Shown one piece after another: positions 38,990 to 58,800 of a stretch of 64,000 bases of DNA. Positions within the stretch are counted from its first letter, which is position 1. Every line of letters begins with the position of its first letter. Below the pieces are notes generated by a model, which saw nothing but the letters and a program-made list of their open reading frames with translations, had not been told where the DNA came from and did no database searches. The DNA comes from Neoconidiobolus thromboides FSU 785. Lineage: Eukaryota; Fungi; Entomophthoromycota. The DNA lies in assembly GCA_025603075.1 (NCBI GenBank), contig MU626285.1:62001-126000 (forward strand), read 5' to 3'. The position numbers and the translations under genes are program-made.

Positions 38990-39071
38990 CGACAGCTACA
39001 GGATTTGAACCTGTGCGGGCAGAGCCCATCACATTTCGAGTGTGACTCCTTAACCACTCGGACAAACTGCC
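38990..39071 (-). tRNA. tRNA-Ser(CGA), 82 nt, no intron
   Basis: GGCAGTT/AGCTGTC acceptor stem, D-arm TCCGAGTGGTTAAGGA, anticodon arm TCACA-CTCGAAA-TGTGA, long variable arm GGGCTCTGCCC, T-loop GGTTCAAATCC, discriminator G. Confidence 0.95.
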
Positions 39072-55951: not shown

Positions 55952-58800
55952 ATGGAACCAAGCCAATTTCAAGCTAAAAATCTTAATTTATCGGAGGAAA
56001 TCGAAGAGATTAAGGAGGATAAATTTGATTTTGACAGCGGCGTCTTGAGCAGAGAAGAAAAAATGGAATCTGTGCTGTTTGAAGAAGGTTAGGATAGTAA
56101 CCTTATTGTGCAATTATTATCAATTAATATTAAAATAGGATGGGAATACTTAATTATTTATGAGCTAGAAAAGAACTATAAATATAAAATAGTAGATATA
56201 CTTAGAGATTTTGAAGTAGATAAACATTACTCATTGGAAATAAAGTAATTTTCTTCTTTTCAATAGCACCAACCTGATAATTTTTTCTAATAAATGTTAG
56301 TATGTTAAATTTGGTACAAAATAATAGTAAATTGGGGAATTTGATTTTAAACTATCCTTTGAAATTAATACCAATTATGGAAAAAGCAGTAAACAGTCTT
56401 CAATATAGCTTATTAAGTTTCAGTACTCATGATGATCCATTATCACATAAAAGAAACGTGCACATTAGATTGAATAAGTAATTAAATATATATTTATTGT
56501 TTTATAATAACTAGTTTGTAGTTTGCCAAATGTAAATGTATATAATAAAATGGGAATGCCAAACAATGATGATATTGGAAAACTTATATCAGTCCAAGGG
56601 ACAATATTAAGGTAATTTATAGAACTATTAAAAATTATAGTAATAATGTTTTAAAAGGACGGGGGAAACCAAAATAATTACCAATACCGCAATTGCAGAG
56701 TGTACCAAATGCAAAGGAATATTCAATTTAACTAGTAATCTGGATAAGCACTCTACTATCAAACCGCCGGTTGTTTGTTTAAATGACGAAAAACCAAACT
56801 GTTTGAATAGTAGATTTAATATTACTAAAACTAATGGTAAATAGCATAACAAAAATCACCCTGATCGGTAAAATCATACTTTATTAGATAGGCATCATTT
56901 TAGACAATATCAAGAGATCAAAATTCAACAAAATATGTCTAATTTATCTATCGGTTCAATATCCTTTTTTTTTTAATTCAAATAGGACATGTTAATTTTT
57001 TTATTCCTTAACTTTTTTTACATGCCAAAAACAGTAGTAGCGATATTAGAAGATGACCTAGTTGATCAAGTAAAAAGTGGCGATAAAGTGAAGATAATGT
57101 AAATATTGAATTAAGATTTGCATAAAAGTAGTATTAAAAATATATAAAAAATATAGTGGGTGTCTACGAAGAAGATGGAAAGAAGTTAACGCTGGGCAAC
57201 GATGTATTGTAGAAATGTACTTCCATGTTAACAACGTTATTATTAAAAGCGACTTGACAATTTTTAATAACACTGTTGTAAATTCATTTACTCAATTTTG
57301 GTCAATTCATAAAGATAGACCGTTGTTAGGTAATTAAAACCAAATTTATTTATTTTATAGTTTCATTCAAATTGACAAGTTTAGCTAGGTAATAATAAAA
57401 CAATAAGTAATCTTATTTATTAAATAAGGTAAAAAGAGATAAAATTGTAAATTCATTTTGTCCAAAAGTATATGGCTTGCACTTAGTTAAACTTTGCTGC
57501 TTATTAACTATTATTGGCGGTGTTTCAAAATCATCCGAAAGTGGACATAAAGTTCGTGGCGAGCCACATTTACTATTGGTTGGTGATCCTGGTACTGCAA
57601 AGTCACAGTTTTTAAAGTTTTCCAATAAATTAGTTCAAAGATCGATTTTGACCACCGGTATTGGAACCAGTTCGTGAGTCATTGTGCAATATTGTCATAG
57701 ATTAGGTTACTAACGTTGATTTATTTAGGGTCGGACTTACTGTTGCTGCAACAAAAGTAACTTTGATGTTTCATAAGTATTTTACACATGACTAATATTA
57801 ATCAAAAGGATAAAGGAGGGTTTGTGCTTGAGCCAGGTGCATTGGTGTTAGCTGATGGAGGGTTATGCTGTATCGATGAATTTAATAGTATTCAAGAAAG
57901 AGATAAAACATCTGTATATGAAGGTAATTATAAATCATTAATATATCTGAATGTCTTTCAACTATTTCTCTAGCTATGGAGCAGCAAAGAATATCGATTG
58001 CCAAAGCAGGTAAAACAATTTGAAATTAAACATCAAATATAATCTAATTGATAATAGGCATAGTGTGTACATTAAATACAAGATGCTCCGTATTAGCAGC
58101 AACAAATCCAAAAGGTAATTACGATCCCAATCAAAGTCTGAGTACAAATTTAGCACTAGCGGGACCGTTGTTATCACGTTTTGATATGATTTTGATAATA
58201 TTAGATGATAAAGATTCAGAGTGGGATGAGTAATATTTAAATAATTTTATTTAATTTAATAGATAATAATAGACATATAGTAAAATTGCCGATTACATAT
58301 TAATGAGAGAATTAGATGGAATTAAAAACGATGAAAATAACACTGAGTTTAATATCGAGCAATTGAGGGATTACATTAATTATGTACAAAATGAATATCA
58401 ACCAAGGATTAGCAAAGAAGTAGATCTAATATTTACTAAATATTATCATTTAGTAAGAATGAAAGAGCAGGATAAATCTAGGACCACAGTAAGGTTTTTA
58501 GAAGCGTTGATTCGTTTAGCTCAAGCACATGCAAGGTTGTGCTTCAAAAATCAAGTTGATTACATAGACGCATGTCAAATTATCCTCTTGATGGAAATTG
58601 CGACTGCTGGCAATTTTTTTATACCTAGGTTAGTTAGCAATCCTGTGAAATTAATCAAATCTACATTCTTTGAAAACCCTGATGAAGAAGCAAAAGAACA
58701 AGGTAATTTTTTCTCCTAGTTTTGCCTTTTATTTTTAATTGTTATTTTAGCTGGTATTATACTTGGTGCCTTGGGCCTTTCTAACATTCTTCTAGAATAA
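55952..58800 (+). CDS. MCM9: MCM9 helicase, multi-exon, short C-terminus
   Basis: [22 protein letters not shown] (MCM9-type Walker A), [44 protein letters not shown]; Zn finger CTKC..C..C. Confidence 0.9.
56959..57021 (+). other. U12-type (minor spliceosome) AT-AC intron, 63 nt, phase 0
   Basis: 5' ATATCCTTT, branch TTCCTTAAC (57004-57012), 3' AC; removal gives [17 protein letters not shown]|[15 protein letters not shown]. Confidence 0.92.

What the first reader, a model, noticed from the sequence alone, without database searches (positions are those of the whole stretch)
56959..57021. Textbook AT-AC minor (U12) intron in MCM9, implying a working minor spliceosome
Seen: TCA|ATATCCTTT...TTCCTTAAC-TTTTTTT-AC|ATG. 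No GT-AG solution keeps the frame here, and excision restores the conserved MCM9 stretch QEIKIQ..LSIGS|MPK...LEDDLVD. All other introns I read in the window look like GT-AG U2-type. Established: these are U12 consensus signals; minor splicing was lost in Dikarya and is known only from some early-diverging fungi. Inference: this very AT-rich compact-intron genome retains U11/U12/U4atac/U6atac, and minor splicing may rate-limit MCM9. Standard gene predictors would mis-model this junction.
Basis: partly seen in the sequence, partly recalled or inferred. Interest (0 to 1): 0.78.

Follow-up and report, generated by a model that had tools for sequence, protein, structure and literature searches.

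The report
U12-type AT-AC intron in fungal MCM9
The 63-base stretch is a genuine-looking "minor spliceosome" (U12-type, AT-AC) intron in the MCM9 helicase gene of the fungus Neoconidiobolus thromboides, but the public gene model already splices it this way and such introns are already known from this branch of fungi, so it is a solid, ordinary example.

Summary
Window 56959-57021 is a 63-nt AT-AC intron. It has a perfect U12 donor (ATATCCTTT) and a perfect branch site (TTCCTTAAC) whose branch A lies 10 nt from the terminal AC. The composite signal occurs once in the window and in 0 of 100 shuffles.

Removing it joins LSIGS to MPKT with no gap against human MCM9 (residues 215|216). The deposited protein KAI9297119.1 of Neoconidiobolus thromboides FSU 785 contains exactly this junction. 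The gene's 11 other resolved introns are GT-AG, 44-58 nt.

The genome holds single candidates for U11, U12, U4atac and U6atac. U4atac and U6atac pair with each other through compensatory changes. It also holds about a dozen more consensus AT-AC introns, and several of these flank recognisable exons.

- In-frame GT-AG solutions do exist, but they have a poor donor (GTTCAA) and delete at least six conserved residues.
- The public model is not mis-spliced at this junction.
- "Rate-limits MCM9" is untested.

Among 10 orthologues, only Rozella has an intron at this position, and there it is GT-AG. I found no transcript and no minor-spliceosome protein. The scan had already found U12-type introns in other genes of this genome. 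Minor introns are published for Zoopagomycota. This is a new member of a known kind, of low interest.

The parts
56959..57021 (+). 63-nt U12-type AT-AC intron (intron 4 of the public MCM9 model)
   Evidence: Sequence. Composite pattern found once in the window against 0 of 100 shuffles. Boundaries match the public protein P0001.
56959..56967 (+). 5' splice site ATATCCTTT (U12 consensus, pairs with the U11 5' end AAAAAGGGC)
   Evidence: U11 x 5'ss duplex -6.1 kcal/mol; 17 of 500 shuffles do as well.
57004..57012 (+). Branch-site box TTCCTTAAC. The presumed branch A at 57011 is 10 nt from the last intron base.
   Evidence: It pairs with GUAAGGA of the U12 candidate with one bulged A.
57020..57021 (+). 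3' terminal AC
56888..56958 (+). Upstream exon (..[24 protein letters not shown]), phase 0 at its 3' end
   Evidence: PDB matches to MCM9 only, ending at residue 215. Mapping of P0001.
57022..57098 (+). Downstream exon ([25 protein letters not shown] + 2 nt), followed by GT-AG intron 57099-57156
   Evidence: PDB matches to the MCM OB-fold; MCM9 residues 217-238 align to query residues 2-23..
56302..58800 (+). MCM9 orthologue as in the public model KAI9297119.1 (13 mapped exon blocks; the true start is probably further upstream)
   Evidence: Pfam MCM_N, MCM P-loop and MCM_lid on single exons. Best PDB matches are MCM9..

Best explanation
This is a U12-dependent (minor-spliceosome) AT-AC intron in the MCM9 gene of Neoconidiobolus thromboides. 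Inferred mechanism, by analogy with the characterised system: the 5' end of U11 snRNA pairs with ATATCCTTT, and U12 snRNA pairs with TTCCTTAAC, bulging the branch adenosine 10 nt from the 3' end. The U4atac/U6atac.U5 tri-snRNP then joins, and the 63 nt are removed in phase 0, joining ...LSIGS to MPKT.... Without removal the reading frame stops after five codons inside the OB-fold domain, so a functional MCM9 needs this splice. Shown here: the signals, the frame logic, the homology across the junction, the agreement with the public protein, and the snRNA gene candidates. Inferred: actual removal in RNA and dependence on the minor spliceosome.
For: The donor and branch site match the consensus perfectly, with correct spacing, and the composite is absent from 100 shuffles. 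Exon A aligns to human MCM9 196-215, exon B to 217-238 from its second residue (so it starts at 216), and exon C to 242-302, so the junction is gap-free. The public protein KAI9297119.1 (P0001) contains LSIGSMPKT, and its exon blocks end at 56958 and start at 57022. Eleven other introns of the gene are GT-AG of 44-58 nt with GTAA/GTGA donors. Own-genome candidates: U11 65.4 bits, U6atac 33.6 bits, U4atac 40.9 bits, U12 34.7 bits, all full length with Sm sites, the U11 AAAAAGGGC box and the U12 GUAAGGA box. U4atac x U6atac stem II is -26.7 kcal/mol (0 of 500 shuffles reach it) and stem I is -10.8 (4 of 500), with compensated changes. Exact-pattern searches of the genome give 8 hits against 1 control, 5 against 1, and 13 against 1. 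At least three of the other hits flank exons with Pfam domains: GTP_EFTU, IPK and an alpha/beta hydrolase. Minor introns and minor snRNAs are published for Zoopagomycota and other non-Dikarya fungi (PMC10639083, PMC11347168, PMC2396436).
Against: I obtained no transcript evidence. The 90% cluster of P0001 has a single member, and a word search with the next exon found nothing. U12 and U4atac score below Rfam's gathering cut-offs. The U6atac candidate lacks the AAGGA box thought to pair with the 5' splice site, and its duplex with this donor is no better than shuffles (-2.7 kcal/mol). Variants of that box are known in other species (PMC2396436). Six-frame searches for PDCD7, the SNRNP25 Ubl domain and the U11-48K zinc finger found nothing. 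The intron position is not conserved in 9 of 10 orthologues examined.
Confidence: 0.9

Rival explanations
1. The major spliceosome removes a GT-AG intron here instead (donor GTTCAA at 56954, acceptor at 57034 or further downstream; 81-117 nt), and the U12-like signals are coincidental.
For: Seven such solutions are in frame and free of stops.
Against: They delete GSMPKT or more, removing the conserved G-[ST]-x-P-[KR] residues present in all ten orthologues and in human MCM9. The donor GTTCAA has T at +3, whereas all 11 other donors of the gene start GTAA or GTGA. The public protein does not use it. The composite U12 signal is not expected by chance.
Confidence: 0.03
2. The AT-AC intron has these boundaries but is removed by the major (U2-type) spliceosome, as a few AT-AC introns are in other organisms.
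For: Minor-spliceosome proteins were not found, and the U6atac candidate pairs poorly with the donor.
Against: From general knowledge, U2-type AT-AC introns carry U2-like donors (ATAAGT-like) and no TCCTTAAC box close to the 3' end. This intron has both U12 boxes in perfect form. All four minor snRNA candidates are present, and U4atac and U6atac co-vary.
Confidence: 0.04
3. The stretch is not removed at all: the gene is a pseudogene, or it makes a truncated product.
For: No transcript was seen here.
Against: Retention gives a stop after five codons. All downstream exons remain open, with intact MCM P-loop and lid matches and 37-44% identity to full-length MCM9 orthologues over about 600 residues.
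Confidence: 0.02

Closest known systems
U12-type (minor) AT-AC introns of animals and plants, removed by the U11/U12 and U4atac/U6atac.U5 snRNPs
   Same: Donor /ATATCCTTT, branch box TTCCTTAAC about 10 nt from the 3' end, terminal AT-AC, no need for a polypyrimidine tract, and a single such intron among many U2-type introns in the gene.
   Different: It is very short (63 nt) and sits in a compact, AT-rich fungal gene. The partner U6atac candidate has GUUGAGAGA in place of AAGGAGAGA and GGC in place of the AGC triad.
Minor introns reported in early-diverging fungi: Basidiobolus meristosporus (Zoopagomycota, n=249) and Rhizophagus irregularis (n=205) in PMC10639083; minor snRNAs in Zygomycota and Chytridiomycota in PMC2396436
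   Same: The same phylum-level lineage (Zoopagomycota), the same kind of intron, and the same set of snRNAs.
   Different: Neither Neoconidiobolus nor Conidiobolus is named in the main text of those papers, nor in the one supplement held. This particular MCM9 intron is not described anywhere I could search.
Rozella allomycis MCM9 (RKP17880.1), intron at L008:926-953
   Same: An intron at exactly the homologous position and phase (EIGT|MPKA against SIGS|MPKT). The two flanking intron positions also coincide.
   Different: In Rozella it is a 28-nt GT-AG intron with donor GTAACA and no U12 boxes.

Membership tests
U12-type (minor spliceosomal) intron | 5' splice site matching /[AG]TATCCTT | tested here: met
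   ATATCCTTT at 56959-56967.
U12-type (minor spliceosomal) intron | Branch-site box TCCTTRAY lying roughly 10-15 nt from the 3' splice site | tested here: met
   TTCCTTAAC at 57004-57012; the branch A at 57011 is 10 nt from 57021. The composite pattern was absent from 100 shuffles.
U12-type (minor spliceosomal) intron | Terminal dinucleotides AT-AC or GT-AG, with excision restoring the reading frame and the homology | tested here: met
   AT..AC. Only these boundaries give recognised termini among the four protein-equivalent solutions. The junction is gap-free against MCM9.
U12-type (minor spliceosomal) intron | The host genome encodes U11, U12, U4atac and U6atac snRNAs | tested here: met
   One candidate for each. 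U11 and U6atac are above Rfam's cut-off; U12 and U4atac are below it but full length with Sm sites and functional boxes. U4atac/U6atac stems are -26.7 and -10.8 kcal/mol.
U12-type (minor spliceosomal) intron | The host genome encodes minor-spliceosome-specific proteins (65K, 59K/PDCD7, 48K, 35K, 31K, 25K, 20K) | tested here: inconclusive
   Six-frame searches with PF16021, PF18036 and PF05253 gave no hit. Exon-by-exon search of short, intron-rich genes is insensitive, and two of the three controls rang nowhere.
U12-type (minor spliceosomal) intron | Removal from RNA at these boundaries, dependent on the minor spliceosome | not testable with these tools
   No transcript-derived copy exists in the collections. 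The only indirect support is that the public CDS uses the junction.
MCM9 (MCM8/9 branch of the MCM helicases) | MCM OB-fold, P-loop ATPase and lid domains | tested here: met
   PF14551, PF00493 and PF17855 on single exons. Precomputed Pfam for P0001 includes MCM_OB and MCM9_N.
MCM9 (MCM8/9 branch of the MCM helicases) | Closer to MCM9 than to MCM2-8 | tested here: met
   The lid exon scores E 2e-13 to MCM9 against 2.5e-7 to MCM4 and 6e-7 to MCM8. Exons A and C hit MCM9 only. The best full-length relatives are named MCM9.

The most novel reading that the evidence does not exclude
The position is an old fungal intron caught in two states: U12-type in Neoconidiobolus and U2-type GT-AG in Rozella, at the identical codon boundary and with both neighbouring introns also shared. 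That would be a natural example of conversion between intron types. It would sit in a genome whose minor spliceosome is itself unusual: the U6atac candidate has GGC for the AGC triad and a third variant of the 5'-splice-site box, compensated in U4atac and apparently in U12.
Probability: 0.3. Interest if true: 0.3.

Novelty: new member of a known kind. Interest (0 to 1): 0.15.

Why it matters
It adds one well-supported minor intron, in a DNA-repair helicase gene, to the small catalogue for Zoopagomycota. It also confirms that N. thromboides keeps the four minor snRNAs. For annotation, this junction in the public model is right. It opens no new question. The only mildly interesting points are the position shared with a GT-AG intron in Rozella and the divergent U6atac candidate.

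Tried and rejected
- **Transcript evidence.** A word search with the next exon (57158-57331) gave no candidate. A look-up of the public protein's contigs was withheld for the window's own genome. Its 90% cluster has one member. So I could not get direct RNA evidence.
- **Minor-spliceosome proteins.** PF16021 (PDCD7), PF18036 (SNRNP25 Ubl) and PF05253 (U11-48K zinc finger) gave no hits. I treat this as uninformative.
- **A more canonical U6atac.** Two pattern searches for AAGGAGAGA..RGCA found one site each. Neither is a U6atac by cmscan.
- **Conservation of the intron.** There is no intron at this position in Mortierella, Coemansia (intronless gene), Smittium (assembly gap nearby), Gonapodya, Penaeus, Riccia or Gossypium. 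Clydaea has a GT-AG intron nine bases upstream.
- **Other U12-like sites in the window.** The relaxed scan listed several, for example 37224-37166 on the minus strand. That one has no evident coding context.
- **Literature on MCM9.** Two papers mention both MCM9 and minor introns, but neither calls MCM9 a minor-intron gene.
- The joined (spliced) model was never assembled or searched; exons were searched one by one by reference. No human contig was fetched; human MCM9 entered only as PDB chain matches.

Full report
**What is there.** The window is about 26% G+C. At 56959-57021 on the + strand the sequence reads TCA|ATATCCTTTTTTTTTTAATTC...TTATTCCTTAACTTTTTTTAC|ATG. The donor ATATCCTTT and the branch box TTCCTTAAC (57004-57012) are perfect U12-type consensus elements. 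The presumed branch adenosine (57011) lies 10 nt from the last intron base. The terminal dinucleotides are AT and AC, and the length is 63 nt.

**Is it more than chance?** Each box alone is at chance frequency in this AT-rich window: ATATCCTT occurs 10 times against 7.1 expected, and TCCTTAAC 4 times against 2.2. The composite ATATCCTT-N20-50-TCCTTAAC-N4-12-AC occurs once and in none of 100 dinucleotide-preserving shuffles.

**The gene.**
- Single exons searched by reference match Pfam MCM_N, the MCM P-loop domain (three exons) and MCM_lid.
- Against solved structures, the lid exon matches MCM9 best (E 2e-13; MCM4 2.5e-7, MCM8 6e-7).
- The exon after the finding (57158-57331) and the exon before it (56890-56958) match MCM9 chains only.
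- The exhaustive protein search with the 138-aa lid exon returned one near-identical protein, P0001, 609 aa. It is KAI9297119.1, [quoted passage not shown]. This names the organism, an entomophthoralean fungus of the Zoopagomycota.
- Its best full-length relatives are proteins named MCM9 from animals, plants and early-diverging fungi, at 37-44% identity over about 600 residues.

**The junction.**
- The upstream exon ends ...[16 protein letters not shown], aligned to human MCM9 residues 196-215.
- The downstream exon begins [15 protein letters not shown]. Its second residue aligns to MCM9 residue 217, so its first is 216.
- The next exon begins at residue 242. Excision of exactly 56959-57021 therefore gives a gap-free alignment.
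- P0001 contains [20 protein letters not shown]. Mapping it onto the window puts the exon blocks at ...56958 and 57022....
- Four boundary pairs give the same protein (AA..TA, AT..AC, TA..CA, AT..AT). Only AT..AC is a recognised pair.
- Retention gives ISFFF and then a stop.
- Of the other 12 gaps in the model, 11 have a GT-AG solution of 44-58 nt with donors starting GTAA or GTGA. One gap, 57323-57434, involves a micro-exon and I did not resolve it.

- The statement that no GT-AG solution keeps the frame is not strictly right. Seven in-frame, stop-free GT-AG solutions exist, all from GTTCAA at 56954, with lengths 81-117 nt.
- Those solutions delete GSMPKT or more. That includes the G-[ST]-x-P-[KR] residues present in every orthologue I aligned. 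Their donor is unlike any other donor in the gene, and the public protein does not use them.
- The statement that standard predictors would mis-model this junction is not borne out, because the deposited model has it right. How the annotators obtained an AT-AC junction I cannot tell. Use of transcript data is a reasonable guess, not a result.

**Is there a minor spliceosome?** Rfam models searched over the window's own genome (24.6 Mb, 799 contigs) gave one candidate each:

| snRNA | Place | Bits | Rfam cut-off |
|---|---|---|---|
| U11 | C14:11757-11880 | 65.4 | 39 |
| U6atac | C1:41699-41843 | 33.6 | 33 |
| U4atac | C25:43214-43362 | 40.9 | 53 |
| U12 | C12:151736-151892 | 34.7 | 53 |

- All four cover their model end to end.
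- U11 starts AAAAAGGGC, the 5'-splice-site box, and has an Sm site.
- U12 has GUAAGGA, the branch-site box, which pairs with UCCUUAAC leaving one A bulged.
- U4atac has the AAUGAA...UGA kink-turn stem and AAUUUUUGG.
- U6atac has the 5' stem, GAGAGA and a terminal U run.
- U4atac and U6atac pair with each other. Stem II is -26.7 kcal/mol (0 of 500 shuffles reach it) and stem I is -10.8 (4 of 500).
- In stem I, U6atac AUUGGCA faces U4atac UGCCAAU, where human has GUUAGCA facing UGCUAAC (human sequences from my own knowledge). Two differences are thus compensated on both strands.
- By my reading of the printed sequences, U6atac UAAUU-GGC can also pair with U12 GUC-UU-AAUUA (helix I). The short duplex energy alone is not distinctive (-5.6 kcal/mol; 54 of 500 shuffles reach it).

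I take these as the real genes.

**Two oddities of U6atac remain.**
- It has GGC where the AGC triad is expected.
- It has GUUGAGAGA where most species have AAGGAGAGA, so it pairs poorly with the donor (-2.7 kcal/mol, no better than shuffles).

PMC2396436 describes a different variant of this same box ([GU]CCGA) in several lineages that clearly have minor splicing. A divergent box is therefore not evidence against function. Two pattern searches found no more canonical U6atac copy.

**Proteins.** Six-frame searches for PDCD7, the SNRNP25 Ubl domain and the U11-48K zinc finger gave nothing. Given exon-by-exon matching in an intron-rich genome, this is inconclusive.

**Other minor introns in the genome.** Exact-pattern searches, each compared with the reversed-pattern control, gave:

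| Pattern | Hits | Control |
|---|---|---|
| RTATCCTT..TCCTTRAC..A[CG], short spacing | 8 | 1 |
| Same, longer spacing | 5 | 1 |
| ATATCCTT..CCTTRAY..AC | 13 (11 distinct) | 1 |

- Several hits lie between open exons in compatible phase. Exons beside three of them match Pfam GTP_EFTU, inositol polyphosphate kinase and an alpha/beta hydrolase.
- The GTP_EFTU site is the HBS1 intron that an earlier agent of this scan reported.
- Earlier notes of the scan list U12-type AT-AC introns in at least seven other genes of this genome. Several of those notes claim RNA support. I did not test those claims.

**Conservation of the position.** I fetched the genes of ten MCM9 orthologues and mapped their public proteins onto the DNA.
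- Only Rozella allomycis has an intron at the same codon boundary and phase (EIGT|MPKA). It is a 28-nt GT-AG intron with donor GTAACA.
- The neighbouring intron positions on both sides also coincide between Rozella and Neoconidiobolus.
- The downstream intron position is also shared with Gonapodya, Mortierella and the shrimp Penaeus.
- Clydaea has what reads as a GT-AG intron nine bases upstream.
- Mortierella, Smittium, Gonapodya, Penaeus, Riccia and Gossypium have none at the position, and the Coemansia gene has no introns.
- So this is not one of the deeply conserved animal-plant minor introns. It may be an old fungal intron that differs in type between two lineages, or a parallel gain. I cannot tell which.

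**What is known.** Minor introns and minor snRNAs in non-Dikarya fungi have been published since 2008 (PMC2396436; PMC2846911 is a 2010 paper on repeated U12 intron loss that I did not open). [quoted passage not shown] Neoconidiobolus and Conidiobolus are not named in the text I could search. PMC10639083 also reports no cell-cycle-linked minor splicing in the fungus it studied. This gives no support to the idea that the intron rate-limits MCM9, and that idea remains untested.

**Limits.**
- I obtained no transcript.
- The spliced model was not assembled or searched as a whole. Exons were searched separately by reference, and the public protein P0001 stood in for the joined product.
- No human contig was fetched. 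Human MCM9 appears only as PDB chain matches.

**Verdict.** This is a real U12-type AT-AC intron (confidence about 0.9), correctly represented in the public protein. It is an ordinary new member of a known kind.

Noticed in passing
L002:1501-1645 (G000:C1:41699-41843, +), with L004:1501-1649 (-) and L001:1501-1657 (+): The only U6atac candidate has GGC where the near-universal AGC triad is expected. It also has GUUGAGAGA instead of AAGGAGAGA, which matches neither the usual box nor the published CC variant. The GGC is matched by UGCCAAU in the U4atac candidate and, by my reading, by GUC in the U12 candidate.
   Followed up: partly
L008:926-953 (Rozella allomycis MCM9, RKP17880.1): A 28-nt GT-AG intron sits at exactly the codon boundary of the Neoconidiobolus AT-AC intron, and the introns on either side are also at shared positions. 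This could be a change of intron type at one old position.
   Followed up: partly
window 56108-56248 (+) and 56302: The public MCM9 model starts at the ATG at 56302, which aligns to about residue 49 of orthologues. An upstream open stretch ending ...DKHYSLEIK resembles the HYPLxVD motif of the MCM9 N-terminus, so the model is probably truncated at its 5' end. Pfam gave no hit for that stretch.
   Followed up: no
window 57323-57434 (+): Three residues of the public protein (FLA) fall between exon blocks, and no simple two-exon GT-AG solution exists. A micro-exon of a few bases around ...TTTAGCTAG... seems to be needed. Another reader of the scan flagged the same spot.
   Followed up: no
L007, about 1346-1405 (Clydaea vesicula MCM9, KAJ3209946.1): The public model skips the conserved residues KLAV. 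A GT-AG intron starting at GTAAAATG would give QEHVGKLAVGTIPRS, which fits the family better.
   Followed up: no
window 37224-37166 (-): A 59-nt AT-AC-like stretch (ATATCCTCT ... TTTCCTTATCTCTAC). The flanks show stops in all frames just upstream, so it is probably chance.
   Followed up: partly
window 38990-39071 (-): A tRNA gene (Rfam 55.3 bits). It is the only Rfam match in the window at gathering score.
   Followed up: no
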